From Squalus acanthias (lineage: Eukaryota): DNA of 64,000 nt. The notes beneath the pieces were generated by a model that saw nothing but the letters and a program-made list of their open reading frames with translations, was not told the origin of the DNA and ran no database searches. Shown piece after piece: positions 27,620-56,710 of the stretch. Numbering within the stretch: the first letter of the stretch is position 1; each line of letters opens with the position of its first letter. The stretch covers positions 38,316,001 to 38,380,000 of the forward strand of contig CM059449.1 of assembly GCA_030390025.1 (NCBI GenBank). The letters are read 5' to 3'. A program made the position numbers and the translations under genes.

Positions 27620-27741
27620 TCAGACTGTGGAGGAGTCGTTGACATCAGGCTTTTGTTGGTCTGCGAAAGGAAATCTTCTGCTTCTTCTTGTAAATAAATT
27701 TACGTTCTCAATGGCGGCTTTCAACTCGGCCGCATCCACAT
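27620..27741 (-). CDS. MHC class I-like gene, putative terminal cytoplasmic exon 7 (DVDAAELKAAIENVNLFTRRSRRFPFADQQKPDVNDSSTV*)
   Basis: Acceptor tttcacttcggttttctag|; phase 1 matches exon 6; open to TGA. Confidence 0.6.
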
Positions 27742-30244
27742 CTAGAAAACCGAAGTGAAACAGAACCAACACCCACTCAGCTCAGGGCAGCCTAGTTTCC
27801 CAGAATAGTCATAAAACAGGCGTTGGGACCTCATTAGCATATGGAAAGTGCCGAAAGCCTGTTTTACCAAACAGGACGCCTGAGAAATAGTTGATCCAAT
27901 TTCAGGAATGACATCCTTGGGGCGCAGGCCGTTAGTTCCTGAGATTGGCCCATGTTGCACCTCTGTTTTGCCCGTTAAATGCGCGCCACTAGATTCAATT
28001 GCTACACCTGGATCTACTTCTCGGCTGTAACTACTGGCAACTGGTTGTATAACATCACAAATGTCGCCGATAAAGACGTGGAATGATTCCGAGCCATTAT
28101 ATATACTTACTATCATGACTGTCACTGCTGCAGGAACTGTGGGGAGAGTTCAGAAGGTCAGGCGGAGGTTCTCAGGGAACAGACACCAACCCACTTGGAT
28201 TGTCTGTTTAGGGAAGTGAAGGCTCTAAACTCATTGTCCCGGGTCAGAGTCTGAAAGGGGCAACTTGTTCGGTATCTTCTGGTGTCTGGCCACTGACAGG
28301 TGAAAATAGATGTCTTCAGAGCAGCCGCACCCACCCTCTATTCCCTATTGCTCCTGGTCTTCACCCCATTGCCACCAAGTACAGGGAGATGCTCGCGGAG
28401 AATGCAATATCTAGCCAGAAACTCCAGTGGGAGCTGAGATGCAAAACAATTGTCTCCATTAAACTCACGATCCAAACCAAGCTTCCAAGGTAGCTCAGAA
28501 TTTTTTTACACACAGTTGCAGGGCTACCAATAGTAGGCTGTTAAAATCAAGGCCTGTAAGTGCACATAGTCACCTGCGGCGTTCCCTGGGAGCGGGGACA
28601 CATCTTTTATGGGTATCTCCAATATCAGGCAGTAATTCATTCATAACGGTGGAAAAATGACCTCTGTGATTTACAGGCCGGGGCCTTTTTGAATTACACC
28701 AGCTGCTAAGGGGCGCAGTTCGTTGGATTTGGCTCCCTGGAATGTCGCCTGGTTTCGACAACAGCAGCCGCTGTAAGTAGGTCCTGGGAAGGGTTTGAGG
28801 AGGCGAGGCCGAGGAGGGCCATTGCAGGCCGGCAGTACATTTCTTACACCCAGAGGAGCGCACTTTCTCCACAATGTGAAACGTACCTTTCCGGGACCTC
28901 GTCCGCTCCAACCCAGGTAGAACTGGTGGAAGGTGCCCGTCCAACTCTCGGACTAGTTCTCTCCAAAAATGGCAATCGGCTCTGATGTTCATTTTAAATA
29001 AGCCTGCCACCTGACTCAGTGACCACTCTGACCGTCCATCGTTGGCCCAGGGCAACATTGCTGCGGCCACAGTGACTGCGGTAATCAGCCGGTGGGTCAT
29101 TCCCAATCATTTTAGGGGCTCTTACCGTCTTATTTCAGCTGGATGGTAGGCCTGAATACTGAACCCTATGCAGTCTGGCATCCCTCAAGAAGCAAATGGC
29201 CATCAATTGCCTATCCCAACAATATTGCTCCAAGTTTGTACATTTTTCCACAGAACCGAATACCATTACCTCCTTTGGCAATCTATCCCATATGTTCACC
29301 CCCACTGTTAAATATGTAAATCTAAAATTTCAGTGAAATTTTCCTCTTCAATCCGGAGCTGAATTCAATGGAACGGAAAACTGGGGGTTGGGGTGGGGGG
29401 GGGCAGATTTACAATGGGCGGCTGATCTACTACCGCCCGTTTTAAGCCACCGTTGATATAGACAGTACATATGGGGCAGAAATTCATCTCAGGCAGAGCG
29501 CTAAACGGGCGAGATGATATCGGCCCGCTGTTTAAGGCCCCGCTTGATAGTTATATTGAAGGGAGGGTTACACTCAGACATATCTGTTTCTAAACAGTCC
29601 GTGTTCATGATAAAGATCATGTTTCATTTGGCAAGAATATTATGAACATTACCTCTAAATGATGTTGCATTAAAATCAGCTGTCATTGAAATACTGGAAT
29701 TTGCTGCTTGATATAAATGATGGAGTAAGTGGTGTCAGACCCATTTCCGCCGGTGAGGCCTCTCAGCAGCCGGCAATCTCCTGTCAGTAAATGCCGGCTG
29801 TTGGCCTGCGGGTCCCTTTCCATCAGTTGGGTGTGAAACCCCGCGGGTTGAGCAGGGTCTTGTCAAGTTTACTCCTATCTTATGTCACAGGCAGAATCAT
29901 AATTTCCTGCCATGTTTAGAATCAGAAAAGGGAGAAAGTGTAGGGCACAAACAGGGTAGAGAATTGAGGAAAAACTTACGGCTTAACTCAATGGCAGATT
30001 ATTGAAGTTGGTTGTGGGTACTGAAGTCCGCAATCTACAGAACAACACTCAATGATGAATTCGTTATTAAGCTGCGTCAATAATTCATATTTTATTCATA
30101 CTATTTGATACTGTTCGTTCACAAAAAGAATCAATATAATATGAAGGAACAATTTGATTGCTGCAGCTATAGGCGGTTTCTGCAAATTTAATCGTCAGGA
30201 AGATTGTTATAGGTATCAGAGATAAAAAAAAATACAACGGGAAC

Positions 30245-30400
30245 AGGTGGAGTTGCAGTGGTTTAGACACTGGCCTGTCACCTCGGGGACCTGGGTTTAA
30301 TCAGCCCGGTCTAATGGGGTGAAATTCTCTGATGTGTGCTGGCTGCACGCGTTTTATGTGAAATGAGTCCATCAGGTTCCTCATGGGGTCGGGAATACAG
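30245..30400 (+). mobile_element. Possible tRNA-derived SINE head
   Basis: A-box-like tgcagtggtttag and B-box-like gggtttaatc. Confidence 0.4.
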
Positions 30401-30629
30401 CAGAAATTTGAAGCCAATTCATCGGCAATTCCACTCAAAGAGGTCACCTGGTGGCTGGATTTGGAAATGGGAACCTGCTACACTGGTGCTGCCAGGATAC
30501 CCTCCTGTGTGTGGGTCTTTGTGTACCGCGGTGCTTTCCTCTGCACAAACCTTACCTGCGAGTGATTCGGGCTGACAATGGGTGCGTGAAATGAGAAGGG
30601 ATCCAGTCCCGAGTACCAGTAGCCCTCAC

Positions 30630-30661
30630 CTTGATCACCAAGATGAAGAAAACTTGAAGCA
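30630..30661 (-). CDS. MHC class I-like gene, putative cytoplasmic micro-exon 6 (S-ASSFLHLGDQ-D)
   Basis: tgtgttttag|32 nt|gtgagg; phase 2 in matches the TM exon, phase 1 out matches exon 7. Confidence 0.62.
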
Positions 30662-31213
30662 CTAAAACACACATGTCTTTTTTTCAATATGTATTTAAAA
30701 TTAACATTCAAGGGCGTGACCAAGAAATGCAAATCTTGTATTTATAAAAAAATCTAATAGACATACCATCAAATAAAATTCCGTTGTTTAATGTTTAGCA
30801 AAGTGAAGCCCAGTTTAGGATTACTCTGTTCATTGGTCTGATGTGACGTCGATGCCGACGGCACCAGTTATTACTGCACCACAAACAACAACTGTGAATG
30901 CTCAAGTCCGTGAAGGATCTGCTTCAGTTAATTTAGATCTTACAAAGACTATGTTCTAAAAATATCAACGTGGCATTCAAACTGTTTTTATTGTGATATT
31001 TGCATTACCATTGGGATGGAAAGTATCCCCTAACCACTATTGTTCCAAGGGCAGGTACTTAGTATGCTTATTCAAATAACTGGAACTAATGTCCATTACT
31101 GTGTGATGTAATTATCTCAGCAGACCCCTCTCAGATATATATGAGGGATTCATCTGAAGATATCTCGTCTGTGGGTCGTTAACACCAACAAGCTACGCTG
31201 CTTCTCATCCAAA

Positions 31214-34200
31214 ATGGGACGATCAATACTTGCACAGATAGAAGAAATGTACTACCCTATTCTCGCGCTGCTTGGTGCTCCTGGTAAGTCACTATTCTCA
31301 ATTACTGGTTATCTTTGCCAGTTGTTTAACTGTACTACTGCTCTTTCTTCCTATGTGATAATGGCATCTGATCATTCTGATCTATTCTCTGTATAGCTAC
31401 TTTTAATGGTATTGTTTTAAATGAATCACATCAGAGAAAATACGACTTGCTCTGATCTTTCAAAATCAGCATTCCTACCGATTTTATTCCATTGCAATTT
31501 TGTGCTGAATAGTCCTCTGGTTGGCAGGTTGAAGGGAGGAAGACTGGAGCCCGCCCACTGCACTGCCAACACTAACCTGCTGAAGCTTCCTCCTGGAGTC
31601 CTCATTGGTGATACAATGTTTATTGTGGTAACGCATCCCTTACTGGCTCCCCGCTATTGGGAGCGAGCGACATTTAGTGTTGATGCAATTTTTAAAAGGT
31701 TGAAACTAATTAAAGAGGGACATCACTTTTGGAGCTTCAGGAAGCACAACTGCCCAAGTGCCTTGAAGGGGCCGGAGGCTCAGGGCTGGGGGTCAACAGC
31801 AGGAAGGCGCTCAGATTGTCAGATGTATCTGTGAAGCTGTTGCTACTTGAAGCCATTGCGAGAAGAGATTTGAAGGGTTTTCTCCTCCCACTGGCGGGTT
31901 TGCGGTGGGCTGGTCCCAACGCTACTAGGGGGCATTTTAACTTTGGGCGATACTGTAAAATGAGTGTTATCGGAGGGGCCGCCCATTCTACACCTCCCCC
32001 GATTCCCCTTTGCATTGACTTGGATTTTGTCTGCAGGAGGTTGTAGAAACATTCCTTTGTGATGATTCACTGCAAGAGATTCCAAACTGGCCTCTTCTAT
32101 CTCCACCTCATAACATGGGAATAGTGGGATTCCCGTTGGGAAATGCATGTGCCCAGTCAATACTGTACATTCTGCAGAGCTGACTAAAAGGAGCACAAAA
32201 ACTCCAGACAGAACCTCCAGAGAACCAAACAGTTAAAATCAACAGGCAGGCAAAGTAACAGCAAACCTCAGCACTAGCAAACATAACGGCATGCTCAATG
32301 TGGAGTGGCCTCAGGGAACCAGTCTGCAGGTAATATCACCCTTATATAGTGCTGGTGACAAATGGGATCGCGGTTGGGGCAAATGATGCGGACAATGGGA
32401 GTCCTGTTGACTTTGGGTTATAATGTAAAATGTGTGATATCGAATTTTCCGCTAATTATAGGTCCTCCCTATTTCCAATCCATCGAATTCAATGGAAATT
32501 GAATTCGGGCCTGGCCTATAATGGGCGGTGAATCACATATCGCTCATTTTACGCTGTGCCCCAAAGTTAAAGTTACCTCCCAATTCAAAGGGTTTTTCAT
32601 CCCTGCTTTCCCCTATTTAAAGATAATCAAATGCCTTACAGGAGGTAGTAGAGGCGGGGACCATCACTGCTCCATTTTACCGAGTTTTTAGCACAAACAT
32701 GACCCTAATTCAGAATAAAATCCAGCCTCCTGCGGTTAGTTTATCTTTTGCCTCAGAGAAATGAAGCTCCTGGAGGAATGTATAACGGGCGGCCCATCCG
32801 ATATCATTACTTTTACACGAGCGCCGAAAGTCAAACCCGACCCCTTGTGTCCAGACCGAGTGTTAGAATCCCACCGGGAACAGATCATGCCGAGCTCGCA
32901 ATTTTTATAATTTTCAGGTTGGATGAGAAACAACAGTTTGCCTATGACTCCCCGGTACTAATCAGTGTGGATCATTGCACTGCAGCAAACTCGGAAGGTG
33001 TATATCTGTGGAATGTGCTACCTGGGCAGCGCCGATGCAGCGCCAGCAATCCGTGTCCCATCACTAGTTCTTTTACCAATCGCCCCAGGTTGTTTTTAGA
33101 TTTGGCAGCAACATTGCAAGTGAACTAACTGTTGGAAATTGATTAAAGCGTTTATACAGGTCATTCCTGAATTCCCACCTTTCAACTAATTAGAATGTAC
33201 TATATTTTATGGAGTACAAATCTGGTCTGGTACATTTCATGGATCCCGCTGCCGAGGTGTGGAGCGCTCTGACTCTCGGGCTATGTGTAGATACCCTACA
33301 ATCCAGTTTGAAATATTTTGATATCACTTTAGGCCAGAACAACGACTCACTCAGAAACTTAACTTATGGGCGTCAACACCAGGATAACACCTTGCTGGAT
33401 CTTTGAATATGTTTGCTTACAAGACAGGACTGAATATTACGTGGTGATTAATATTATTACACTATTACACATTACAATGCAAAATCACGAAGGTTATTTG
33501 CAAAAAAAGGAAAATAAAGATCTGTAAGTCCGATTTATAGTATCTTTGATGTAATCTGTAAACAAGACATCGAATCTGTACGGGTGGTGTTATGAAGTAT
33601 GTGTGTTCACTGATTTGTATCTAAAGTTGTTGTGTGCAAATAAATGCCAAATGATTGACTTAAGTTTTAGAAGTTACCGATTTCCAAAAGTTATTGGGGC
33701 AGATTTTGTGTTGGGTATGACAGCGTACTCTGACAGTATGCCATCACACCGCCTTTAAAATATATCACAAGGTCAGTATTTCCGCATGCACTTGCACTAA
33801 ATCCAGAATTTGCCATCTGTCAAGGTGCGCAACATACGGCCCGATATATGTGTGTACATATTGTCGATCGAGTTTCATTTTAATTACTTGGAAAGTTGGA
33901 TAAGAAACTTAAATAAAGCGAACACCTATCAGATTTCAGTAACGAATATGTCCTTATCGCTCAAACATGAACAACATAACAAGCAATATAATGCATTATT
34001 AACAAGAACATAAATTTATCTATTACCAGTCTAAATGAGGTCTGAATAATATATTTTAAGCCTGAAAGTTAACATTGAATATATGGCTGGTAATCTCTAT
34101 CTGAAATTCAGCAACATTACTTGTACCAGTGATAGATTGTTACTGAGTATCACAGCAGGAAGTTGTATAAATATCGACTAAAAATTTTTGAGTTTGGATG

Positions 34201-35587
34201 AAAAATAAAACAAAATGCTGATATATGAAACAAGTCCAAGTTTTTAGAAGTTTTTAAAATGTAATTTCAATAGAAGAGACGGAAAGCAGTTTCTGTGGGC
34301 GTGGCTTAGTTTGGGCAGCTTTTGTGGGCGTGTCTTCTCTTACGCACAGGCTGTCCGCTGCTCTCCTGCCCTTTGTGATGTCATTCGCTGCGCACAGCTC
34401 TGCAGCGCCGAAAGCATGTCTCCGTTCTGGGCCTTGCACAGGGTAAGATTGTACTCCGAGCTACACCGCCGATCGTAATTTTTGGGCCAGTATTTTACTT
34501 CGAGGCAACTCAGGAAAATAAGGATGTGCCGTGCATGGATAAATAGTTAGTCATCCTCAGGATTTCCACGTCTAGGTGGCACAGAGAGTGATTGATTTGA
34601 GTGAAGGAAAAATCAGCATTAATTAGTACACTTTTTTTGTTCCAATTACGTGTGATGTCCATAATCGTGATTTATTTACCCACACTCGCACTTGCAGCCA
34701 ACTTGGTCAAAATTGTGATTCTCTTCCGGGGAAAACGCGGCCACTCCATGGAAATCACTATTTACCTGGTGGCCATGGCAGTGGCCGATCTGCTGGTCCT
34801 GATATTTGGCGGGGTCCTGTATGAGATGAAAGCAATTTATTTCCCGGATTCATTCCTGGACTACACTCCGGTCTGCAGTCAGAATGTCTTCCTTATTTAT
34901 GCTTCTATTGAATGTTCTGTCTGATTAACTGTCGCTTTCACCTTTGATCGATTTGTCGCCATTTGTTGCCAAAAAATAAGAACTCAATATTGCACCGAAA
35001 AATCTGCGGCAGTGGTTGTAGCAACGATATCGGGGCTGAGCATTTTTGAAAATTTCCCAATGTACTTTATTTTAGTACCTCGCGCAATAATTGACAATAT
35101 ACCGTAGTTCTGTGAACTGAACTCAAAACTCTATACTGTACATATATGGGTTATATTCTTATGGCTTGACATAGTTTAAATCCCTTTTATTCCTTTTCTT
35201 TTGTTTCTGATATTCAATGGTCTGACCATCAGGCAATTTCTACTGAAAAGTAGAATCAGGAGGGATCTCCGGAGAATCGACAGTGACCCAGAAATGAACA
35301 ACCGCAGGAAATCCATCGTTTTACTGCTGGCCATATCTGGCAGTTTTATCATGTTATAGATGGTAAGTTTAATTCATTATATATCTGTACAAATTATGGA
35401 TATTCAATACTTGCACACAGACTGCAGTAATCCGTTCAACATTTTGGAACAAACTGGATATATGCTGCAGAATATGAGTCCTTGCACAAATACCATCATT
35501 TATGCAGTGTCCCAGACTAAATTCAGAGTGGAGTTAAAGAATCTGATTCAATATCCCTTGTCTGTAATTACTAAGTTAGGGAAATAA
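31214..35587 (+). pseudogene. GPR139/GPR142-like GPCR copy 3 pseudogene (exons 31214-31283 and 34698-35587)
   Basis: Collinear with copy 1 (AMAVADLL, FDRFVAIC, NTIIY); in-frame stops TGA 34922, TAG 35105, TAA 35177, TAG 35357; ICL3 is 15 nt shorter. Confidence 0.9.
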
Positions 35588-36564
35588 TTAGAAGGTCTGA
35601 GTCTAACCAGAGCTGACTACAAAGAATTGAGACTCGCTTCTATCTTATTTATTCAACACGGGCAGCAGCCGATCAGCCGCTTGTTATTCGCCCAACACCA
35701 TGTGCTTTTCGGTAGAGTTTAATAGAGAGGAAAGTCGCGCGGGAGTGTAATGAGCGTCCGACCTGCTCCCGCCTATTTTGCGCCGCACCTGAAGGTGAAT
35801 TTCACCCCTGGTCGGTGGAACTTTCACCTCTGGCGGGAGCGAGGTCAATGGAAGGAGATTCGGGCGGCGTTTATAGACAACAGACGATCCAATTCTCCCC
35901 ATTTTACTCCACGCCGAAGTAGAAAGTTCCCTGGAAAATTTTCCCTTTTTGCATTTGTGTGACATTTTAACTTTCAACTTGACTCTCTGGCGAAGATTTT
36001 CACCTTGTCGCTGGAGCCTGAAATCGATGTTGCAGATTGGCCACCGGTGCTAGAAATTCGTCTTATTCTCATTCCCATTGTAACCACAGGGTTAGCAGCA
36101 GAGTACTACACTGGCCTCGCTCCCTTCAGTTACAGAGGGAGAAGTGGCCTCGGGATTTGCTCCGGACAACTGTGTTGGCGATGCTGCTGGTGAAATGTGA
36201 GTGTGTGGACAGGATCGGGCGCGGCTGTGTTTCCAGTAATTGAACAGTGTTTGCAGTCACTGTTTCTGCTCACAGATGGAGACTGTCTACCTGAGGCCAA
36301 TGTCGGAGTCAATTGTACTAATTAGGAAGGTATAAATATTAACAAAACAAAATTTTAAATCCCTGGCGTGACATTATTCAGTGCGGCCGTTACGTAATGT
36401 CTAAAACGCCAGTTTGTGCAAATGCAGATGAGATTTGACAATGTTCCTTCAAAGTTAAACAAGTTAGTAATATTTGAATTAAGTGACTGAAACATAAGTC
36501 GGGGTGAAATGTTTATGCAAATTGAGTTGTTTCAGTAGTAAAGCAATTGCACTTAGATGAATAC

Positions 36565-37495
36565 ATGGAAATTCATATATCCAAATTTGCCGACGACACA
36601 AAATAGGTGGAATTGTAGGCAGTGTAGATGGAAGCATAACATTGCAAAGGGATATTGACAGATTAAGTGAATGGGCAAAACTGTGGCAAATTGATTTCAA
36701 TGTAGGCAAATGTGAGGTCATTCACTTTGGACCTAAAAAGGATAGAACAGGATACTTTCTAAATGGTGAATTCTACAAACAGTGGAGTTCCAAAGAGACT
36801 TGGGGGACCATGTACATAGATGATTAAAATGTCATCAACAGGTACAAAAAATATTCAAAAAGGCTAATGGGATGCTGGTCTTTATATATAGAGGTCTAGA
36901 ATACAAGAGGGTTGAACTTATGCTGCAGCTGTACAAAACCCTGGTTAGACCGCACTTGGAGTACTGTGAACAGTTCTGGGCACCACATCTTAGGAACCAT
37001 TTATTGGCCATGGAGGGAGTGCAGCGTAAGTTTACCAGAATGATATCCGGACTTCAAGGGTTAAGTTACAAAGAGAGATTGCACAAATTAGGGTTGTATT
37101 CCCTAGAATTTAGAAGGTTAAGAGGTGATCTGATCGAAATTTTCATGATATTAAGGGATACAGAAAGGGTAGACAGAGAGAAACTATTTCCACTGGATGG
37201 GAATTCGAGGCCTAGGGGGCATAGTCTAAAAATTAGAGACAGACCTTTTAGGAGTGAAATTAGCAAATACTTCTACACACAAAGGGTGCTGGAAGTTTGG
37301 AACACTCTGCCGCAAACGGCAATTGATGCTAGAACAATTGTTAATAGTAAATCGTAGATTAATAGCTTTCTGTTAACCAAAGGTATTAAGGGCTATGGTG
37401 CAAAGGTGCGTATATTGAGTTAGGTCGCAGATCAGCCAGGGTCTCATTTAATGGCGGAGCAGGCTTAATCCTCTTCCTATGTTCATATGTTCCTC
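36565..37495 (+). mobile_element. CR1 LINE 3' fragment
   Basis: KFADDTK region, RPHLEYCEQFWAP, FYTQRVLEVWNTLP, tail. Confidence 0.9.
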
Positions 37496-37899
37496 TGATT
37501 AACGATGATTATTTCAGCGTGTTCTTGGATCCAAAGCAATTCTCGCCTTTGACCCTCTCAGGTTCTGGTTAAACACCTTTGAAATCTAGGGAGTGAAATC
37601 CAAATGTTAGACAATCCCGAGATGATGGTGCAGAGCACAGTACAGAGAATGAAGTGACTTGTTCATTCTCTTTACATGGTCCTTCCCCTTCAATGTAGCT
37701 CAGTGGCAGTTCGTTTAGTGCACAGGAGCAGCGGGACTAAAGAGTGGTCGATTCTCACTGCTTTCGCCCGGCGTTAACGGGGCGGTAATGGCTTCCAAAT
37801 GGGGTCGGTAGCCTTATCTTCCCGGTAACGTTGTGCAGGTTCCAATCAGTTCCACAGGCGATGGAACCGGAGAGATTTGCTTGCACTCCGGACTGCCGG

Positions 37900-38106
37900 G
37901 CTGCCAAGTCACTATCGCCCGATTTGCTGCCAAGTCGCAATCGCCATTTTGCTGCCATGTCACTATCGCCCGATTTGCTGGCAAGTAGCTCTCTCCCATT
38001 TTGCTGCCAAGTCGCTTTCTCCCATTTCGCTGCTAAGTTGATCTCTCCCATTTTGCTGGCAAGTCGCTCTCTCCCATTTTGCTGCCAAGTCATTATCACC
38101 CGATTT
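37900..38106. repeat. Minisatellite, ~8 units of 25-27 bp (tttgctgccaagtcgctctctcccat)
   Basis: Visible tandem units. Confidence 0.85.
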
Positions 38107-38139
38107 GAACTACCGCCCAAGACAATTTTATACCCCAAT

Positions 38140-38320
38140 GGGTGTCATTTTAATTATTGGTGTTAATGTAAAACGGGCGATATTGAATTGGGTATCTGTT
38201 ATACACCTCTTCCGATTTTTCCATGAAGTCAATGGGAAAGAAAATTGGGGGAGGTGTGTAACGGGCGGCTGATCAGATATCGCCCGTTTTACCTTATCTC
38301 CAAATCTGAAAATGACTCCC
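38140..38320. mobile_element. Palindromic MITE family B, near full-length copy
   Basis: gtcatttt..gtaaaacgggcgatat...atatcgcccgttttac..aaaatgac. Confidence 0.75.
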
Positions 38321-39309
38321 AATGACTCTCCAACCTGTCTTTCCCCTATGAAGGTGCCATGATTGCAGTAGACACGGGCAATATTTGCCCTAAATGGGTA
38401 TTATTTTTAACACCTGGGAGTTCTAGTTCGCTTTGTGCTCTTCTGATTACATTTCTACCCTTTACCTTAATGTCACTCTGAAGCCATTTACATCACAACC
38501 TTAGATTTGGTGTGAAGGGATATTCTGGAGGAGGCAGTCTCCCTCTACTTCACCTGGTAGTCAGGTGGGGTCCTGGATCTGGACTTACACTTAAACATCT
38601 GGCGTTAAGCCAAACCAGCCCTTAGGGATCCTCAGGCTGCAGTGTGAATGTGGCCTATGGGAAGAGAAAGTACTCGCTCCAATGCAGAATCAGGAACGCT
38701 ATTAAACTTGCATTGTCACTGAGACAATTAGTGTGGATCTGTGTCCTGTCAGCCCACTTTCATTCACTTCTAGGAATTAAGGTTCGCCTTTAAAACGTTT
38801 CAGAGGAATTGACCCTTTCCATGAAGTGTGATGCTGACCTCCATTCTTAAATCTGGGTTCTTTTGATTGGCAGGTTGTGGGGTGCTGCATAAGGAAGTAT
38901 TTCAAGTATCCACCTTGTTCCGAAAAGACACACTTTCAGAGAGAACACTTGATGATGTTGGTAATAAAGGTTTTTTTAGCAAGTATGCTTCCCTCTGAAC
39001 ATATCAATCAAACATAAAATCATGTTGATTCTGATGGTGTTACCATGGGGAAAGTTTTCATGTGTGGGCCACCTGTTAGAAAACGTAAAGAGGTGACATT
39101 GGGCTCAGGGGGTAGCGCCAAATGGCGATAGCGAATCACCAGCCAGTTTCACAACAACCCCATGGGCTTTTCTATTGACTTCAATGAAAGGGCGGCCGAT
39201 TCACAAGTGGATATTTTGTGTTATCGTCGAAGACCAATTTCGCCCCCTAAATTGATTAACAAAGAACTGGATTTCAATTTCACTACACTTAGGGCACGTG
39301 CATATCGAA

Positions 39310-39940
39310 ATAAACAGAAGTTACAACATGGAAACAAATCCTTCAGCCCAACCAGTGCGTATCGGCATTTACTCTCCACACGAGTAAATATTACTAATCA
39401 CATTTACCCACCCTGTTCTCATATCCCTTCAACCCCTTTTCCCTTTGTCCAACTTCTCAATCTAATCTTAAATGTTGTGATAGTTTCTGCCTCAACTTCT
39501 CTCACTGGAAATGGATTCCACAGCCTCACAACGCTCCGTGAAAAGAATCGTCTCCTACCTTCTGTTCTAAATCTCTAACATTTAACCTGGTATCTATAAC
39601 CCCTCAATTTTGACCTTCAACTATTGGAAACCGTCTGCTTCTATCTACCCTGAGCCATCCGTCCATCATTTTAAACACTTGTATTATGTCACCCGGTATA
39701 GCATTGTTCAAATAAAAAGGCGCATTTTCCAAGCCTTTCCTTATATTTGTGTTTCCTTCTATCAGGCCGCATCCTAGAGAATTCACCTTGTAGCTTCTCG
39801 AAAGCTCAAGATCCCACCTATCGCGTGAAATTCAATACTGCACACAGTGCTCTAACTCAGGTCTTATTAAGGTTTTATAGAGGCTCATAGTTACGTCTTG
39901 GCTGCAATGTTCTGTACCTTTGGGGTTAAACCTAGAATTC
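39310..39940 (-). mobile_element. Old CR1 3' fragment
   Basis: GDIIQVFKMMDG..VDRSRRFP in the - frame. Confidence 0.7.
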
Positions 39941-39994
39941 CATTAGTAAGTTTGCCACGATAAGATACCATTTGTTCTCAAACAATTCAATAAA

Positions 39995-41812: not shown

Positions 41813-41927
41813 TTATAACAGATATTTACAATTCAAATATAATCCTGGGGCAGGCCAAAGGATTTTCTGCAAAGCCGCTGTGTCATACTTTTACAAACAG
41901 GGGTGTAACATTATACCCTCGCCTTAC

Positions 41928-42033
41928 CTCTGTTTTTTCCTCCACATATAGATTAAAACTATAACGATAGCCAGCGACACCAGTACACACACGACAATCA
42001 GCCCCACATGCTTGACTTTCTCTACTTTTCCTT
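41928..42033 (-). CDS. MHC class I-like gene, exon 5 (connecting peptide/TM: EGKVEKVKHVGLIVVCVLVSLAIVIVLIYMWRKKQ)
   Basis: tttttcag|106 nt|gtaagg; phase 1 in; hydrophobic span followed by RKK stop-transfer. Confidence 0.85.
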
Positions 42034-42939
42034 CTGAAAAATATTGGCAAGGGTTGTATAATTATATGTGCGGATTGACAGTTGTATATATAATCCGTGG
42101 AAAGCTATGGCCCTGCTCATGGTAAGTAGGATGATGCGCTGTTTTATATGGACAGTATCCCTACACCATATAATGCACAATGTATTATTTCATTAAGGTT
42201 TCTTTAAAGCCACAAACTTCACTTTTTGTGAATAAAGCACAGATTCTGGTCAAAGACAGGTGGTCAGGCTGTAAAGGTGACTGGGGGGTGGTGGAGGAAG
42301 AAGCAATGACTGTGAAGAATGAAGCATGGATTCTAGACTGATCGGGGCTGGGCCAGCGATAAGAATGTGCTGCTGGGAGGCCAGTGGAAAAAGGTTGTGG
42401 TCGTGGTGCTCAGCGAGGCAGGGGGAAAGCTAGCAGTCCTCTACCACGCAAACCCCCATGGATCGCTGTGTGAGGGGAGCCAGGTAGGAAAGTGGCAGAG
42501 GTCTGTGTCTGCGGGCCTGGTGAAAGGGGCAATATGAGGGGTAAGTAATGGCAGTTGAATAGATAATGCCAATGTGCCAGCTCCCAGGGCTGGGGGATCG
42601 AGCTTCTGACCGTCCCCGCAGCTCTGTGTGATGGGATGGGGCACAAGGTGCAAAGTTTACATTATATTCACACAGTTAAATCTTTGCTCCCTTTTACTTA
42701 TCTACAGCAATATCACTGCTGTCTCCAAAACCCAGACTGCTCCACAGTGCCACTCAGTGGTCAGCGTCTGTAACTGCTTACAGACTCCGTTTCTTTAATG
42801 CGAATTTTCAATGTACTGCAAGAGCAGGTTTGTGGTATCGTTCAACAATAGGCGGCACCCTATCATTTTCAATCTGTTACCTAATGTAATGTTAGATTGG
42901 TGCAGCAGCTTCGGAATCTTAACCACAGTCACCATTTTC

Positions 42940-44100
42940 AAAATAGACAGATAGAAATCGCGAGATAGATAGATAGAGNNNNNNNNNNNNNNNNNNNNNN
43001 NNNNNNNNNNNNNNNNNNNNNNNNNNNNNNNNNNNNNNNNNNNNNNNNNNNNNNNNNNNNNNNNNNNNNNNNNNNNNNNNNNNNNNNNNNNNNNNNNNNN
43101 NNNNNNNNNNNNNNNNNNNNNNNNNNNNNNNNNNNNNNNNNNNNNNNNNNNNNNNNNNNNNNNNNNNNNNNNNNNNNNNNNNNNNNNNNNNNNNNNNNNN
43201 NNNNNNNNNNNNNNNNNNNNNNNNNNNNNNNNNNNNNNNNNNNNNNNNNNNNNNNNNNNNNNNNNNNNNNNNNNNNNNNNNNNNNNNNNNNNNNNNNNNN
43301 NNNNNNNNNNNNNNNNNNNNNNNNNNNNNNNNNNNNNNNNNNNNNNNNNNNNNNNNNNNNNNNNNNNNNNNNNNNNNNNNNNNNNNNNNNNNNNNNNNNN
43401 NNNNNNNNNNNNNNNNNNNNNNNNNNNNNNNNNNNNNNNNNNNNNNNNNNNNNNNNNNNNNNNNNNNNNNNNNNNNNNNNNNNNNNNNNNNNNNNNNNNN
43501 NNNNNNNNNNNNNNNNNNNNNNNNNNNNNNNNNNNNNNNNNNNNNNNNNNNNNNNNNNNNNNNNNNNNNNNNNNNNNNNNNNNNNNNNNNNNNNNNNNNN
43601 NNNNNNNNNNNNNNNNNNNNNNNNNNNNNNNNNNNNNNNNNNNNNNNNNNNNNNNNNNNNNNNNNNNNNNNNNNNNNNNNNNNNNNNNNNNNNNNNNNNN
43701 NNNNNNNNNNNNNNNNNNNNNNNNNNNNNNNNNNNNNNNNNNNNNNNNNNNNNNNNNNNNNNNNNNNNNNNNNNNNNNNNNNNNNNNNNCAGAGATATAC
43801 AGACAGAGAGACAGACAGAGAGAGACAGTCAGACNNNNNNNNNNNNNNNNNNNNNNNNNNNNNNNNNNNNNNNNNNNNNNNNNNNNNNNNNNNNNNNNNN
43901 NNNNNNNNNNNNNNNNNNNNNNNNNNNNNNNNNNNNNNNNNNNNNNNNNNNNNNNNNNNNNNNNNNNNNNNNNNNNNNNNNNNNNNNNNNNNNNNNNNNN
44001 NNNNNNNNNNNNNNNNNNTGGGACGGAGAGAGAGAGAGAGAGAGAGAGACATAGTTAGAGAGACAAGGAGACAGATAGAGAGAAAGACAGACAGACAGAT
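42940..44100. repeat. (GATA/GACA/GA)n microsatellite with N gaps
   Basis: Visible directly. Confidence 0.95.
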
Positions 44101-45678: not shown

Positions 45679-45945
45679 CCCAGGAGACGGTTTGCCCACC
45701 CGGCAAGCTGCTGTGCTCAATATGACAGGAGTATTGTTTCCCATCATACGGATCAAATTCAAGGGTTGTCGTTAGTTGATACGTCCCATCGTGATTGGGT
45801 AATAACCCAGTAGATTTGTTCTCAGGGGCATGTTCTCCATTCTTCAACCAGGTCACGCTGATGGACTGTGGATAAAATCCAGTCACAAAGCAGTGGAGAA
45901 ACCAACGATCAGCAGCGCTGGCAATAACTGAGACCTCAGGGGAAA
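45679..45945 (-). CDS. MHC class I-like gene, exon 4 (alpha-3 Ig-C1 domain)
   Basis: LHCFVTGFYPQSISVTWLKNG, LLPNHDGTYQ, YSCHIEHSSL; 267 nt, phase 1-1, ag/gtaagg. Confidence 0.95.
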
Positions 45946-46173: not shown

Positions 46174-46449
46174 CTTGTCTGGTTAGTGAAGCATTTCCAA
46201 TAGAATAGTATCTCCTCCATAAATCCACACAGTAATTTTCTAATAAGCTCTTGAAATAAAGATTCATCTTTGTTTCCTTATCCCATTTCACTTTGAAGGT
46301 CTGAGCTATTGGATCATGTACGGTCCAAACCAATTTGTCTTTATCGAAACTAAATGCGTATCTTCCATCATAAGCGAATTTCAAAACCCCTACACTAGGA
46401 TTGGCATCATTCAGCTCACAGCCAAACAGTCCTTGAATGTAGTGAGTAC
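46174..46449 (-). CDS. MHC class I-like gene, exon 3 (alpha-2)
   Basis: THYIQGLFGCEL..FAYDG..KVKWD..CVDLWRRY; C101-C164 pair; 276 nt, phase 1-1. Confidence 0.95.
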
Positions 46450-49318: not shown

Positions 49319-50065
49319 GGCCAGAAATTCGGCTCTTCAGCTTCCCGCGGGTGCAAGAATCGTGCGCGTACTTACATACCGCGCCTGCCGTTGTGCTTCG
49401 GGCCCGCGTGGAATTCGGCTGCTGGGCCTCCTGCAGCTGTCGGCGCGCAGTGCTCGTGTATCCCAGGGGCGTAGTTTGTTCGAAGCGTCCCCTGGGATCA
49501 CGTGGGCCATGGAGAGCCAATCGGAGCAGGGAATCTTCATTCATAGATTTGACATGAAGACCTGTCAAATCTATGAACAGAGATCGGCCCCAAAACCTCA
49601 CTAAAACGTCAAATACATTTTTTTTTAAAAATCACATTTTTAAAATAACTATATATTACATAAATTAACTACTTTAAACAAAAATTTTAATTTTTGAAAA
49701 AATTAATTACACTTTTTAACTGTGCTAAAAATAAACTTACCTTTCTTTAAAGTATGTAAAAAAGATAAACCTGCTAATTTTTTATTAAATTGTACTTAAT
49801 TCACCACTTACCTTGATAAAAGCAGGCCTTGCACCTCCTTTTTCCCCACGCAGCTTCTCCGTACTTACCCTCACGGAGAAACCTGAAAAAAACCTGAAGT
49901 TCGAGGTCTAAGCACTGCCTCTCCAGCACACGCGTTCGACCACTGAACCCCTTCCTTCAGGGGAACGGAAGTTCCGGTTTCCAGCGCATGTGCAGTGCAT
50001 GCGCGAAACCGGCACTTTCGCTCGGTCTGTGGGTGAGTACCCGTGGAGACCCGAATTTCTGGCCC
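49319..50065 (+). mobile_element. MITE family A, copy 2
   Basis: Collinear with 230-999. Confidence 0.85.
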
Positions 50066-50117
50066 ATTATGATTAGTTACATGTAAACCACCAGCAAAAC
50101 AATTAAATAAACATAAT

Positions 50118-50879
50118 GGCCCGAAAATTAGACCTAATACGCGAGAGTACGCACTGTGTACTCTCACGTATTAGATCCCGAATTGCTGGTTTCCTGCATG
50201 CACTGCGCATGTGCGGGAAACCGGCACTTCGTGAATTGAAAAGGGGGCGGTTCCTAAGTGAACCACGTGCGCGCTACAGGCTGTGCGCACGCAGTGCACT
50301 TAGTTTTTTTTTCAGATTTGAATGCGCAGGTAAGTAGTGAAGATTTTACACACAAAGAAAGCAGGCGTAGGACCCCTTTTAACAAGGTAAGTAGTTAATT
50401 AAGTGTTATTTTAATTTTTTTTCAACAGGTTTATCTCTTTTAGAGACTTTAAAGAAAGGTAAGTTTATTTTTATAATTTTTAAAAAGATTTTAAATGTTT
50501 TCAAAAATTTTATTTTTTGTTTAAAGTGGTTAATTTATTTAACTATACTTATATTATTAATGTGATGGCTTTTTTTAAATTTAATTGAGGTTTAGCGGTT
50601 CTTTTGTGGGGGTGTAGTATTCATAGCTTTGACAGCTCTTGCCGTCAAAACTATGAATGAAAGATGGTGTGCTGCCATTGGCTCTAACTGAATCACGTGA
50701 TCCCAGAGCTCGCAAGAACTAATTGCGTCTCTGGGTCACGCAAGCACTGCATGGTTCCAACAGAGAGAGCCTTTGAAACTAAAGTTCGTGTGGGCCCGGA
50801 GCGAAAAGGTAGGCGCGGAATGCGATATCGCGGGGAATCCTTACCCCCGCGGGAACCATCCATGTTTAATTTCTGGGCC
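50118..50879 (-). mobile_element. Divergent MITE family A relative, inverted, with AAT target-site duplication
   Basis: aat|ggcccgaaaatta...taatttctgggcc|aat. Confidence 0.75.
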
Positions 50880-51982: not shown

Positions 51983-52243
51983 TTGATGTTTGGTTGTTCT
52001 GCTGGCACCATCTATCAGCCGGTCCCTTGATGAGTCCGTGGAAACCAACTTGAGTGCTTGTGTATCCGTCCCAGTAACTCTTGGCAAATGCTTCCGCCAT
52101 CCATTGCTGTCTTGGAACAGTTATTTTCATATTTTTGTCGTAATAGCAAATCTCACAGCCATCCAATCGTGCCAGGAAACTATACTCCGGCAGATCAGCA
52201 ATCCCATGGTTCAGGGTGTAGTAATATAGCAGGGAGTGAGACT
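51983..52243 (-). CDS. MHC class I-like gene, exon 2 (alpha-1)
   Basis: ESHSLLYYYT..LDG..YYD..PRQQWM..YWD..NQT; 261 nt, phase 1-1, ctag|...|gtgagt. Confidence 0.93.
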
Positions 52244-54106: not shown

Positions 54107-54320
54107 GGCAGTTAGTGTAACCCGGACTAAAAACGGGGGCAGTCAGTGTAACCCGGACTAAACAAGAGGGCAGTCAGTGTAACCCGGACTAAACATCGGG
54201 GCAGTCATTGTATCCCGGGCGAAACACGGGGCAGTCAGTGTAACCCGAACTAATTACGGAACAGGCAGTATAACCCGGACTAAACACGGGGGCAGTCGGT
54301 GTATCCCGGACTAAACCCGG
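54107..54320. repeat. Minisatellite, ~7 units of ~30 bp (ggcagtcagtgtaacccggactaaacacgg)
   Basis: Visible tandem units in intron 1 of the class I-like gene. Confidence 0.88.
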
Positions 54321-55259
54321 GTCAAATACTTTGTTCATGATGGCGGTCTAGTGCAATAATGAATATAGCCGCACAACTCCTGTCATTTGACTTACCAGGA
54401 ACCACCCTTTGAAAAAAGTAAAGGCTCACTAAAGCAAAGAGGAACATGTTTCAGGGAGTCACTCAGTGAAAACCCTGTACAGCGAGACGGGAAAGTTATG
54501 TCGTTGCCCGAACCTCTCCCACATTATTCTACTTATCTCGTTTAGTGAAACTCATTCTATCCAATGGGAAAGAAATCACCTCCCGTCACTGGGGAGGGAA
54601 TCTCTGGCTCTATTCCCAGCATTAGGAACAGCGGGCAGAATTGGATTAGAAAATAACACACTGGTCAATGGCAAAGACTTGAAACTGGAGGAAGACTGGG
54701 ACACAAATTGAAGGCATCGGCGAGAATATTACCCACTGAACCTGATCGTTAGCGATTATAGAGTTGGCTGTTAAAAGCAGCAGCAATCTCCAATCCTGTG
54801 TTTGCACCTTATCAGAAGAGGTGCAAACCTCACTGGCAAATACAGCCTCGCCTTGTTAAGGTCAATGAAAGGCCAATCACAGGCTGGTCACTTTCAGTGT
54901 TTCTGCTGGGTGATAGAAAGTTTACAAGCTACACAATCTGAAAATTCAACACTCCTCCGTTTCAGTGGCGGTGTAAGCCTATCTGCTTTGAACAGATTGA
55001 GGCTCTGCTAAAATAGTGGAAAGAGGAATTTCAGACCAAGGTACAAATACACTTGTTCATTGACCCTTATTACTCGCTGTACCGCCATACATGTTCTGCC
55101 TAAAATTACTGTTGGCAATATTAGTGAGACATGTTACTGTCCATTGCTGTAACACAGGTGATATCCCACTTGTTTTAAGCAGGCTACACCATTAAAATAA
55201 CAGGCAAAGCAATGTTACACCAATATGGTAAGCGTTTCACCTCCAATAACACCAACATT

Positions 55260-55600
55260 AATTTAGGAACAGGAGGAGGCCATTCATCCCCTCGAGCCTT
55301 TTACTGCCATTCAATTAGATCATGGCTGATCTGTATTTTAACTCCATCCAATCATGGAATAATATAGCACAGAAGGAGGCCATTCGGCCCATTGTGCCTG
55401 TGTCGGCTCTTTGGTATAACGAGCCAATCAGTCCCATTCACCTGCTCTTTCCCCATAGTCCTGTATTTTTGTTTTCCCTTTAATTATTTGTCCAATTCCA
55501 TTTTAAAAGTTTCTGTTAAACCGGCTTCCACCTGATGTCCTGTGCTGGTGAAAGGCGCTGTAGAAATGCAAGTCTTTCTTTCTATCTATCTTTCTTCCGC
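55260..55600 (-). mobile_element. Short CR1 3' ends plus a + strand SINE tail
   Basis: Two gaaggaggccattc 3' UTR motifs; gtgaaaggcgctgtagaaatgcaagtctttctttc tail. Confidence 0.65.
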
Positions 55601-56658
55601 AGCAGCTGTAACAGGTGCCGAAAGCTGCCTCTGGTGCTCACCCCGAACAGCTCCAGGCTGTGAGCAGCAGGCACTGATCAATTCCAACAGTCAGTGGGCT
55701 CGATCTTGAATTTGTGCGATAGTAAAACGGGCGATAGCCAGTCGGCAGCCTTTTTTATAGCTCTCCAGATTTTTACTGCCATTGAACTCAATAGAAGGGG
55801 GAAACGGGGAGAAATATGGAAAACGGGCGGCCGACTCGCTCTCGCCCTCTTTACACCATCGCACAGAGTCAACATGAGCCCGAATGGAACCGCACATGGT
55901 GGGAATCCGCTACAAACAGCAAATGTTGCAAATATGCAGCAGGTCAGTGTGAAAGAGACAGAGAGGTTAACTCTGGGGGCTCAATCTTCACCCGAACCTG
56001 CACGGATCGCCTCAAAGCTTCATTCTAAAGCGAGTCGGAAAGTGTAAAAGAGGTTCCCGGGTCGCTGGAACCCGTTTCCACCTGTGATAAAAGTGAACCC
56101 CTCCCTCTGTATTTTTAATGAATTGTCCGATTTATTGGGAGGTTTAAAAGGTTTTCCAAGTTCCCAGGAGGTAGAAAGAAGCTTTTAAAATGCAGCTTCC
56201 CGCCGGCTGGAGTTACACTGAAACAGGTGTGAACCCGAACCGACTGAGCCGCTTTCCTGCAGGAGTCTCGCCGCTGGGCTCTGGGTCACTCGGGGGTCAG
56301 GTCGGGACTGGGCTCGCGGTTATACTGACACTTCCGTACCCGCAAGCCGCTTAGCAGGAACAAACTGTCCGTCCCCCTCCTGCTTATCAGAGCGAACATA
56401 GAAGCTGTCACAGTAACTGAGCGGTAATGTCAGGCTGTCCGGACAGTAATGGACATCATCTAATCCAAGCAAAGGGATCAGCGAGCCTGAGAAGCAAGAT
56501 GGAGATTCCAATCCCGCTTCATCGCTTCACTTCCGCACACACTGTCCAGTTTCCCTGTGTGAAACACCTGATGTGACCGACAGGCCTGCCGGTTACAGTC
56601 TAAGATCAGAGGGTGAGCCTGGAGACATTCGATGATGCAGCGGGAACCGGCTACTCAC

Positions 56659-56710
56659 CAGACAGGGCCGCGTGTAGGCGGAAGAAACTCAGTACAAGTG
56701 ACAGAAACAT
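56659..56710 (-). CDS. MHC class I-like gene, exon 1 (signal peptide MFLSLVLSFFRLHAALS)
   Basis: ggcATG start, 52 nt, donor g|gtgagt, phase 1 gives G+AG=E of ESHS; CpG-rich surroundings. Confidence 0.82.

What the first reader, a model, noticed from the sequence alone, without database searches (positions are those of the whole stretch)
27620..56710. MHC class I-like gene interleaved with an orphan GPCR cluster; a whole GPCR (pseudo)gene is nested antisense in its tail intron
Seen: the TM exon exits in phase 2, the 32-nt exon at 30630-30661 is phase 2-to-1 with canonical sites, and the exon at 27620-27741 is phase 1. Together they give an unbroken 1116-nt ORF. This puts the + strand GPCR copy 3 (promoter, exon 1, intron, exon 2; ~31000-35587) inside an 11.3-kb intron (30662-41927). 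Two more GPCR units lie beyond the class I 3' end, and a second class I a1 relic lies upstream. Inference: this is a mixed class I/GPCR birth-and-death array, reminiscent of the mouse H2-Mv class Ib/V2R partnership and of MHC-linked odorant receptors. It could be a functional pairing (escort or co-expression) or just co-duplication; sequence alone cannot tell which.
Basis: partly seen in the sequence, partly recalled or inferred. Interest (0 to 1): 0.85.

Follow-up and report, generated by a model that had tools for sequence, protein, structure and literature searches.

The report
Shark class Ib gene beside GPCRs
This is a real, transcribed non-classical MHC class I gene next to orphan GPR139-like receptor genes in a shark, but the receptor pseudogene lies just past the gene's true end, not inside an intron.

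Summary
The minus-strand MHC class I gene is real. Its exons are about 75-85% identical to PDB 9CH4, a shark class Ib molecule.

The tail model is wrong. Spliced contigs from public runs join the TM exon (42033..41928) to an exon starting at 37585. That gives a 990-nt CDS whose tail ends with a stop at 37560..37558.

The GPCR pseudogene (31214-35587, four stops) therefore lies about 1.8 kb beyond the class I 3' end, on the converging strand, and is not nested. In this window the GPCRs and class I sequences form two adjacent blocks.

The assembly gap lies inside the a3-TM intron, and no residues are missing across it.

The linkage itself appears old. In 9 of 12 elasmobranch species the orthologue shares a contig length with close GPCR relatives, and in little skate the two are fused in gene models. 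Nothing here supports a functional pairing. Earlier first-stage notes report similar neighbourhoods elsewhere in this genome.

The parts
56659..56710 (-). Class I exon 1 (leader; ATG at 56710; 52 nt; exits in phase 1)
   Evidence: tblastn of P0121 residues 1-17 gives 82% identity.
51983..52243 (-). Class I exon 2 (a1 domain, 261 nt, phase 1>1)
   Evidence: Pfam MHC_I E 1.2e-4. PDB 9ch4_A E 1.9e-41.
46174..46449 (-). Class I exon 3 (a2 domain, 276 nt, phase 1>1)
   Evidence: Pfam MHC_I 4e-16. 9ch4_A 8.9e-44.
45679..45945 (-). Class I exon 4 (a3, C1-set Ig domain, 267 nt, phase 1>1)
   Evidence: Pfam C1-set 2e-20. 9ch4_A 2.9e-39.
42979..44018 (.). Two assembly gaps (42979-43789 and 43835-44018) inside intron 4. 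They break no exon.
   Evidence: One search lists the N runs. One search shows orthologues aligning contiguously across a3 and TM.
41928..42033 (-). Class I exon 5 (connecting peptide, TM and basic stop-transfer run; 106 nt; phase 1>2). Reading through the donor gives an immediate TAA.
   Evidence: Contig pieces at 41932-42031 (records 10 and 24).
37390..37585 (-). Class I exon 6 (terminal). The acceptor AG is at 37587-37586. Coding runs 37585..37558, encoding FQRCLTRT after a split Arg codon, with the stop TGA at 37560..37558. The 3'UTR reaches at least 37390 and runs into a LINE-derived repeat.
   Evidence: joint 37587>41932 in 3 of 4 runs, and near-identical contigs (records 3 and 9) ending exactly at 37585.. 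P0121 tail match E 0.012. Repeat overlap 36943-37465.
30630..30661 (-).
   Evidence: Sequence. Acceptor tract 8/12 pyrimidines. No relative has this peptide. The transcript stop codon lies upstream at 37560.
27620..27741 (-). Its stop abuts a 265-nt inverted-repeat arm.
   Evidence: No Pfam family. Inverted repeat 26627-26892 / 27348-27618.
31214..31283 (+). GPCR copy 3, exon 1 (ATG, 23 codons plus 1 nt, GT donor)
34698..35587 (+). GPCR copy 3, exon 2: a pseudogene with four in-frame stops and a 5-codon deletion. It ends about 1.8 kb from the class I 3' end, on the converging strand.
   Evidence: 57% identity to P0001 over 300 aa, with stops shown; acceptor.
6519..9257 (+). GPCR copy 1: an intact two-exon gene (exon 1 6519-6588, exon 2 8353-9257; 975 nt, 324 codons plus stop)
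   Evidence: (7tm_1 6.8e-19). Best relative is 78% identical.
19128..19197 (+). GPCR exon-1 relic with conserved upstream region and donor. No exon 2 was found.
62742..62966 (-). Solitary class I a1 relic upstream of the gene (57% identity to P0121 a1). No a2 or a3 follows it.

Best explanation
The locus holds one complete, transcribed, six-exon non-classical MHC class I gene on the minus strand. It runs from 56710 to about 37390, roughly 19.3 kb as assembled, with a 990-nt CDS of 329 codons.

It belongs to a low-copy elasmobranch class Ib lineage whose orectolobiform member has been crystallised (PDB 9CH4). That may be one of the 'CD1-like' UFA/UGA lineages mentioned in reviews. This name is inferred, not shown.

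The protein keeps the class I fold signatures and 5 of the 8 classical peptide-terminus residues. The three that changed are R/Y84 to Q, T143 to F and Y159 to L.

After the TM exon the mRNA splices to a short terminal exon at 37585. In most relatives this exon encodes a short tail with a Y-x-x-V/I sorting motif. Here the TM exon is 106 nt, so it exits in phase 2 and a different frame is read. The tail is then 8 residues after a split Arg codon, with no tyrosine.

The GPCRs are members of a very large, dispersed, elasmobranch-specific family of two-exon class A receptors, distantly related to GPR139. One subfamily of them is concentrated on the same chromosome as this class I lineage.

In this window the two gene kinds are neighbours in two blocks, tail to tail. 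The nearest GPCR is a dead copy 1.8 kb past the class I poly(A) region. The neighbourhood is best explained by long-standing regional linkage plus local birth and death. Nothing here shows nesting or a functional partnership.
For: GENE STRUCTURE
- Searches give the exon boundaries, phases and per-exon translations.

LINEAGE
- All three ectodomain exons hit 9ch4_A at E 1e-39 to 1e-44.
- Zebra-shark P0288 matches 9ch4_A at 6.7e-170 over residues 25-292.
- Only 18 proteins reach E<=1e-30 among 2108 candidates, from 13 species.

TERMINAL EXON
- One search shows a joint 37587>41932 (skips 4344, with 4 letters between) in X1, X2 and X4. X3 has none.
- Records 3 (X1) and 9 (X2), with 1 mismatch in 167 and 196 nt, end exactly at 37585.
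- Total depth at both 37518 and 41968 equals the sum of the two contig depths (X1 14.1+8.26=22.3; X2 37.8+9.83=47.6). This indicates the near-identical contigs also cover the TM exon.
- Depth is zero over unique intron (37600-39000 and 42200-42978), which argues the runs are RNA.

HOMOLOGY OF THE TERMINAL EXON
- The P0121 tail matches 37585-37517, including the stop position.
- Read with a phase-1 entry, the exon gives x-FKGV-stop. This is colinear with D/A/E/G-Y-N-x-V/I-stop in five shark orthologues.
- 11 of the 19 proteins printed carry Y-x-x-V/I.

GROOVE RESIDUES
- Gapless alignments to a classical-type shark sequence, P0125.

GPCR FAMILY
- 2359 proteins at E<=1e-10 among 4193 candidates.
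- GPR139 is the only PDB hit at E<=1e-6, at 1.9e-8.
- Copy 1 is intact and copy 3 is broken.

LINKAGE
- In Heterodontus francisci, 31 of 38 listed GPCR hits share the class I contig. The figures are 5 of 5 in Stegostoma and 7 of 8 in Rhinoraja (my count from the table).
- Little skate LOC129716032 isoforms join class I to the next GPCR.
Against: - The runs are only guessed to be RNA, and they are Logan contigs, not reads. They cannot show rare isoforms, transcript ends or expression levels.
- The explicit joint is listed only for a 91-96% identical copy (a paralogue or allele). That copy carries 2 more letters at the junction than the window's gene would.
- For the near-identical contigs, the joint is inferred from their exact end at the acceptor and from depth sums, not from a listed row.
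- The UFA/UGA name rests on a review's personal communication and on the existence of a crystal structure. It does not come from a named sequence.
Confidence: 0.85

Rival explanations
1. The class I mRNA splices from 41928 to a 32-nt exon at 30661 and then to a last exon at 27741. This gives a 1116-nt ORF with a roughly 50-residue tail and places GPCR copy 3 inside an 11.3-kb intron.
For: The phases fit and the sites are AG/GT. The 27741 acceptor has a good pyrimidine tract, 10/12.
Against: - Contigs join the TM exon to 37585, where a stop follows after 9 codons.
- None of the 19 relatives printed has such a tail.
- The peptide matches no Pfam family.
- Comparable paths are frequent by chance.
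- The supposed last exon abuts an inverted-repeat element.
Confidence: 0.03
2. Functional pairing. The class Ib molecule and the neighbouring GPR139-like receptors work together, for example through co-expression, escort to the surface, or shared regulation. This would resemble mouse H2-Mv with V2R receptors or MHC-linked odorant receptor genes, and selection would keep them linked.
For: - Linkage recurs across sharks and rays.
- Adjacency is tight in this window (under 2 kb), in little skate (read-through gene models) and in a 530-kb Heptranchias scaffold.
- The three GPCR upstream regions share TAAT cores, and copies 1 and 3 also share a TATA box at about -77. This fits a dedicated promoter type.
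Against: - There are no expression data for the GPCRs.
- The nearest GPCR here is a pseudogene, and the orientation differs between shark (converging) and skate (same strand).
- Fusion models occur only in the little skate. Among the 120 rows listed of 215 hits, only one (P0298) carries both Pfam domains.
- The family has thousands of members on many chromosomes, so some adjacency is expected.
- The strict O/E consensus is not conserved upstream.
Confidence: 0.08
3. The window's class I copy is a decaying paralogue. A 2-nt loss in the A-rich end of the TM exon shifted the tail frame, so it is on its way to becoming a pseudogene. A second, better-preserved copy elsewhere does the work.
For: - The divergent contigs carry 2 more letters at the TM/tail junction, which would restore a phase-1 exit, and they have higher contig depth (14-38 against 8-10).
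- The tail lacks the tyrosine found in 11 of 19 relatives.
- An a1 relic lies nearby.
Against: - All six exons are open with canonical sites.
- The copy is represented in the transcript contigs.
- Pristiophorus P0122 also reads an F-Q tail after a basic run, so the altered tail may be a squalomorph trait.
- Contig depth is a poor measure of expression.
Confidence: 0.15

Closest known systems
PDB 9CH4 chain A ('Ig-like domain-containing protein', 268 aa), a shark class I ectodomain
   Same: The a1, a2 and a3 exons all align end to end with it at E 1e-39 to 1e-44 and roughly 75-80% identity. The zebra-shark orthologue P0288 matches it at about 85% identity.
   Different: The window's gene comes from another shark order. 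Its best full-length relatives are from Pristiophorus (about 82-83% in a2). I found no paper for the PDB entry: a whole-word search returned 18 unrelated papers, so its ligand and lineage name are unknown to me.
Elasmobranch MHC-Ib lineages (UBA, UDA, UEA, UFA, UGA)
   Same: It is MHC-type class I, non-classical and low-copy. Reviews say single- or low-copy UFA and UGA have crystal structures and are CD1-like (PMC12562908, passages). [quoted passage not shown]
   Different: No named UFA/UGA/UDA sequence was available to compare, so the lineage name is not established. The two primary lineage papers, PMC7002201 and PMC8454915, are not held. In the main text of PMC10751288, a find for 'gpcr', 'g-protein', 'gpr' and 'olfactory' gave 0 occurrences. 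Its supplements were not opened and might list such genes.
Mammalian CD1 (endosomal sorting by a cytoplasmic YXXphi motif; recalled knowledge)
   Same: Eleven of 19 relatives end in a very short tail with Y-x-x-V/I right after the basic stop-transfer run.
   Different: By sequence the nearest solved structures after 9CH4 are MR1 and classical class I, not CD1. The window's own tail has F in place of Y and is read in another frame.
Mouse H2-Mv class Ib genes with V2R receptors, and MHC-linked odorant receptor clusters (recalled knowledge)
   Same: Class I genes and a multigene GPCR family share a chromosomal neighbourhood.
   Different: The receptors here are class A and GPR139-like, not V2R or OR. 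No co-expression, escort function or chemosensory role has been shown.
GPR139 (PDB 7VUG, 9M42)
   Same: It is the only solved structure matched by GPCR copy 1 at E<=1e-6 (1.9e-8). NCBI names most relatives 'probable G-protein coupled receptor 139'.
   Different: The match is weak (37 bits). The family is hugely expanded, with 2359 hits at E<=1e-10. It has its own two-exon structure with a 23-codon first exon, and it carries assorted automatic names such as FMRFamide-, capa- and sex-peptide-receptor-like.

Membership tests
MHC class I heavy chain | a1/a2 peptide-binding superdomain (Pfam MHC_I) | tested here: met
   a2 scores 59.5 bits, above the 28.3 cut-off. a1 scores 22.2 bits, below the cut-off, but it matches 9ch4 a1 at 1.9e-41.
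MHC class I heavy chain | Membrane-proximal C1-set Ig domain followed by a TM segment | tested here: met
   C1-set scores 73.3 bits. The TM exon encodes a hydrophobic run followed by a basic run.
MHC class I heavy chain | One domain per exon, with phase-1 boundaries | tested here: met
   The leader, a1, a2 and a3 exons all end in phase 1. Only the TM exon exits in phase 2.
MHC class I heavy chain | Association with beta-2-microglobulin | not testable with these tools
   No binding data are available.
Classical (peptide-presenting) class I | Eight conserved residues that hold the peptide termini (Y7, Y59, Y/R84, T143, K146, W147, Y159, Y171). The list and numbering are recalled. | tested here: not met
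   Gapless alignment to P0125 shows 5 kept. Position 84 is Q, 143 is F and 159 is L.
9CH4-type elasmobranch class Ib lineage | Much closer to 9CH4 and its orthologues than to any other class I | tested here: met
   For a2, 9ch4 scores 8.9e-44 against 2.3e-16 for the next hit. For a1, it is 1.9e-41 against 6.2e-11. The top three of 544 library hits are elasmobranch relatives at 70-83% identity.
CD1-like (functional class) | Cytoplasmic YXXphi endosomal sorting motif | tested here: not met
   The window's tail has no tyrosine. The motif is present in 11 of 19 relatives.
CD1-like (functional class) | Hydrophobic lipid-binding groove | not tested
   I only noted that two anchor positions became F and L. 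I made no structure model because the joined protein was left out.
Nested (intronic) gene arrangement | The inner gene lies between two exons that are joined in host transcripts | tested here: not met
   Host transcripts end in the exon at 37585..37390, and GPCR copy 3 ends at 35587.
Class A (rhodopsin-type) GPCR, GPR139-like | 7tm_1 domain, with GPR139 as the nearest characterised relative | tested here: met
   7tm_1 at 6.8e-19. GPR139 is the only PDB match, at 1.9e-8.

The most novel reading that the evidence does not exclude
A subfamily of orphan GPR139-like receptors has stayed next to this CD1-like class Ib lineage inside the MHC since before sharks and rays split. On this reading, selection maintains the linkage because the two act in the same cells or pathway. 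That would make it an elasmobranch counterpart of MHC-linked odorant receptors or the H2-Mv/V2R pair. The little-skate read-through transcripts would then be a visible trace of shared regulation.
Probability: 0.08. Interest if true: 0.75.

Novelty: new member of a known kind. Interest (0 to 1): 0.3.

Why it matters
The eye-catching claim, a whole GPCR gene nested antisense in a class I intron, does not hold. The gene model should end at about 37.4 kb.

Two things remain of some value.

1. This is a clean six-exon annotation of a squalomorph member of the class Ib lineage that has a solved structure. Its cytoplasmic tail is read in a different frame from the Y-x-x-V/I tail of most relatives. 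That bears on whether endosomal (CD1-style) trafficking is conserved in the lineage.

2. The closest relatives of these GPR139-like receptors sit on the class I (MHC) chromosome in many sharks and rays, and directly beside the class Ib gene in at least a shark and a skate. I did not find this described. The searches were made, all on main texts only. It makes the old question of MHC-receptor linkage testable in the oldest jawed vertebrates.

Tried and rejected
- **Read-through of the TM donor as the gene's end.** In the window this gives an immediate TAA, so it was a candidate. I rejected it as the main form because contigs splice at 41928 and depth is zero just below the exon.
- **Skate- or Pristiophorus-type tails elsewhere below the TM exon.** A BLOSUM scan of all three minus-strand frames from 41930 to 15000 found only the 37.5-kb exon, scoring 63. 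All other hits scored 33 or less.
- **A third GPCR body.** tblastn at E up to 50 found none between 9.3 and 34.6 kb.
- **Co-duplicated class I plus GPCR blocks.** Window self-BLAST gave only transposon fragments, one palindrome and the GPCR exon-2 pair.
- **The O/E-type promoter idea from earlier notes.** Matches with 2 or fewer mismatches occur upstream of two of the three units. The background rate is 3.7 per kb per strand, so this is not significant.
- **A paper for PDB 9CH4.** The search returned 18 unrelated papers.
- **Papers on GPR139-like expansion in sharks.** Nothing relevant turned up.
No families were found.

Full report
WHAT IS THERE

All internal boundaries are AG/GT. The phases run 0>1, 1>1, 1>1, 1>1 and 1>2, and each exon is open in its own frame.

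Pfam recognises MHC_I on a2 (E 4e-16) and, below its cut-off, on a1 (1.2e-4). It recognises C1-set on a3 (2e-20).

The joined protein was never built or searched.

THE ASSEMBLY GAP

The N runs at 42979-43789 and 43835-44018 lie between the a3 and TM exons. Orthologous proteins align from a3 directly into the TM exon without a missing residue. P0122 residues 350-442 align to a3 and 441-471 to TM, and P0121 behaves likewise. Both exon edges are phase 1. The gap is therefore intronic, and only the intron length is uncertain.

WHICH CLASS I

Each ectodomain exon matches one solved structure far better than any other. That structure is PDB 9CH4 chain A, with E 1.9e-41 for a1, 8.9e-44 for a2 and 2.9e-39 for a3. 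The next hits are at 6e-11 and 2e-16 for a1 and a2, and for a3 are beta-2-microglobulin fusion chains that also match through their own Ig domain. Zebra-shark P0288 matches 9CH4 over its whole ectodomain at 6.7e-170, so the crystal is of an orectolobiform orthologue.

In the 1.84-billion-protein library the a2 exon has 544 hits at E<=0.001 but only 5 at E<=1e-30. The top three are two Pristiophorus japonicus proteins (82-83% identity) and a little-skate cluster (70%). With P0121 as query, only 18 proteins reach E<=1e-30 among 2108 candidates, one to three per species in 13 elasmobranch species. This is a low-copy lineage.

Gapless alignments to a classical-type shark sequence (P0125) show that 5 of the 8 residues that hold peptide termini in classical molecules are kept. 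Three are replaced: position 84 is Q, 143 is F and 159 is L. The list and numbering of these residues are recalled.

A review states that single- or low-copy shark lineages UFA and UGA are CD1-like and have crystal structures, citing a personal communication (PMC12562908, passages). [quoted passage not shown] The gene may be UFA or UGA, but I could not compare it with a named sequence. The two primary lineage papers are not held.

THE 3' END

The arithmetic is right (962+32+122) and the sites are canonical. The evidence points elsewhere.

1. I laid Logan contigs of four runs of one study on 37000-42978. These runs hold 21-32% of the sampled words of the a2-a3 stretch.
   - Three of the four runs (X1, X2, X4; X3 has none) contain a contig that joins 41932-42031 to 37587-37474, skipping 4344 bases. 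These are records 4, 10 and 24.
   - These contigs are 96% and 91% identical to the window on the two sides, so they come from a paralogue or a divergent allele. They hold two more letters at the junction than the window's gene would.
2. Two further contigs, with 1 mismatch in 167 and 196 nt, end exactly at 37585, right after an acceptor AG (records 3 and 9).
   - Total depth at 37518 and at 41968/41980 equals the sum of the two contigs' depths in both runs (22.3 = 14.1+8.26 and 47.6 = 37.8+9.83).
   - I therefore infer that the near-identical contigs also run from the TM exon into this exon. That joint was not among the rows printed.
3. Depth is zero over unique intron sequence (37600-39000 and 42200-42978) and enormous over transposon fragments. 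This is why I take the runs for RNA, although the tool only guesses so.
4. Splicing 41928 to 37585 gives a split Arg codon, then eight codons (FQRCLTRT) and a TGA at 37560..37558. The CDS is 990 nt.
5. The exon is homologous to annotated tails.
   - The last 23 residues of Pristiophorus P0121 match 37585-37517, including the stop (E 0.012).
   - Read with a phase-1 entry, the exon gives x-FKGV-stop. This is colinear with the D/A/E/G-Y-N-x-V/I-stop tails of five shark orthologues and with the start of the D/A-Y-x-x-I tails of rays.
7. In-silico paths are cheap. The 14.9 kb below the TM exon holds 906 AG sites, of which 88 have a good pyrimidine tract. Of those 88, 58 give phase-2 terminal ORFs of 8 or more codons and 10 give 40 or more. 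There are 224 open internal-exon candidates.

THE TAIL FRAME

Most relatives (11 of the 19 printed) have a very short tail with Y-x-x-V/I directly after the basic run. This is the form of a tyrosine-based sorting signal as in CD1 (recalled).

The window's TM exon is 106 nt and exits in phase 2, so the terminal exon is read one base off the frame that yields the canonical-looking tail. Even in that frame the tyrosine codon is now Phe. The divergent transcript copy has two more letters at the junction, which would restore a phase-1 exit.

Whether the window's copy is a variant allele, a squalomorph peculiarity or a decaying paralogue is open. In favour of a squalomorph trait, Pristiophorus P0122 also has F-Q after the basic run.

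THE GPCRS

tblastn with the best relative finds only two receptor bodies in the window.

- **Copy 1** is an intact two-exon gene. Exon 1 (6519-6588) has 23 codons plus 1 nt, and exon 2 is 8353-9257. Together they make 975 nt, or 324 codons, which is the modal length of the family.
- **Copy 3** has an intact exon 1 (31214-31283). Its exon 2 (34698-35587) carries four in-frame stops and a 5-codon deletion.
- **A third unit** is only exon 1 with its upstream region (19128-19197).

The family is very large: 2359 proteins at E<=1e-10 among 4193 candidates. These are mostly named 'probable G-protein coupled receptor 139' in sharks and rays, and the best is 78% identical, from Heptranchias. GPR139 is the only solved structure matched at E<=1e-6, and weakly (1.9e-8).

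ARRANGEMENT

With the class I gene ending near 37390, all GPCR pieces (at or below 35587, + strand) lie on one side and all class I pieces (at or above 37390, - strand, including an a1 relic at 62966..62742) lie on the other. Copy 3 and the class I gene converge tail to tail, about 1.8 kb apart.

Nothing is nested or interleaved within this window. No duplicated block carries both kinds of gene.

LINKAGE ELSEWHERE

Of the 12 species with contig data for the class I orthologue, 9 have at least one close GPCR relative on a contig of the same length. The other three are Chiloscyllium punctatum, Scyliorhinus torazame and Mobula birostris.

By my count from the table, the GPCR hits sharing the class I contig number 31 of 38 in Heterodontus, 5 of 5 in Stegostoma and 7 of 8 in Rhinoraja. 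Most of these contigs are 20-214 Mb, so this shows chromosome-level linkage only.

Close linkage is shown in three cases:
- this window;
- a 530-kb Heptranchias scaffold;
- little skate, where NCBI gene LOC129716032 has isoforms of 574-663 aa that run from the class I TM exon into exon 1 and exon 2 of the next GPCR on the same strand. Separate 334-aa class I and 288-293-aa GPCR products also exist in Logan assemblies there.

Such fusion models were not seen in any other species. Among the 120 rows listed of 215 hits, only one (P0298) carries both Pfam domains. The skate GPCR is 59% identical to copy 1.

The family also sits on many other chromosomes. Unchecked first-stage notes report it elsewhere in this genome, including next to other class I genes about 2 Mb away.

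LITERATURE

The main text of PMC10751288 has no occurrence of GPCR, G-protein, GPR or olfactory, and its supplements were not opened. Searches for GPR139 with shark terms, for 'GPR139-like', and in the catshark sensory-genome paper found nothing on this family. These searches cover only the held library.

VERDICT

The headline structure is not real. The interpretation as a class I/GPCR neighbourhood with birth and death holds, and the linkage seems old, but a functional pairing remains pure conjecture.

Noticed in passing
window 41928-41945 and 37558-37585: The TM exon ends in an A-rich run and is 106 nt, so it exits in phase 2. The terminal exon read from phase 1 would give x-FKGV-stop, colinear with the Y-N-x-V tails of other sharks. 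A divergent transcript copy has 2 more letters at this junction. This could be a frameshifted tail or a homopolymer assembly error.
   Followed up: partly
proteins P0272, P0273, P0275 and P0298 (Leucoraja erinacea LOC129716032): NCBI isoforms of 574-663 aa fuse the skate orthologue of this class I gene in frame to the neighbouring GPR139-like receptor through the receptor's 5' leader. These could be read-through transcription or an annotation artefact.
   Followed up: partly
window 6270-6518, 18880-19127 and 30965-31213: The three GPCR upstream regions align. They share TAAT-type cores at about -103 to -127 and a GGGA-containing element near -205, and copies 1 and 3 also share a TATA box at -77/-78. 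A strict O/E consensus is not conserved, and such matches are common in the window.
   Followed up: partly
window 26627-26892 and 27348-27618: An inverted repeat pair of about 265 nt at 81% identity, MITE-like.
   Followed up: partly
window 49342-50855, also 234-1004: A 1.5-kb self-inverted (palindromic) element lies inside the a1-a2 intron. An 82% identical partial copy lies at the start of the window.
   Followed up: no
window 56827-56900: Upstream of the class I leader lie a TGAGTCA site, an AGTTTC half-ISRE, a TGACGTC site and an ATTGG box, 120-190 nt before the ATG. The layout recalls the ISRE/X2/Y layout of MHC promoters. I saw this by eye, and the motif names are recalled.
   Followed up: no
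window 36943-37465 and 40060-41435: LINE reverse-transcriptase fragments fill the last intron (RVT_1 at 40060-40452). One fragment overlaps the class I 3'UTR, and the ATTAAA at 37452-37447 lies in it.
   Followed up: partly
window 62742-62966: The a1 relic keeps an open frame of about 75 codons but has lost conserved residues (for example, the YW pair is replaced) and has gained cysteines. No a2, a3 or TM exon follows within 6 kb.
   Followed up: partly
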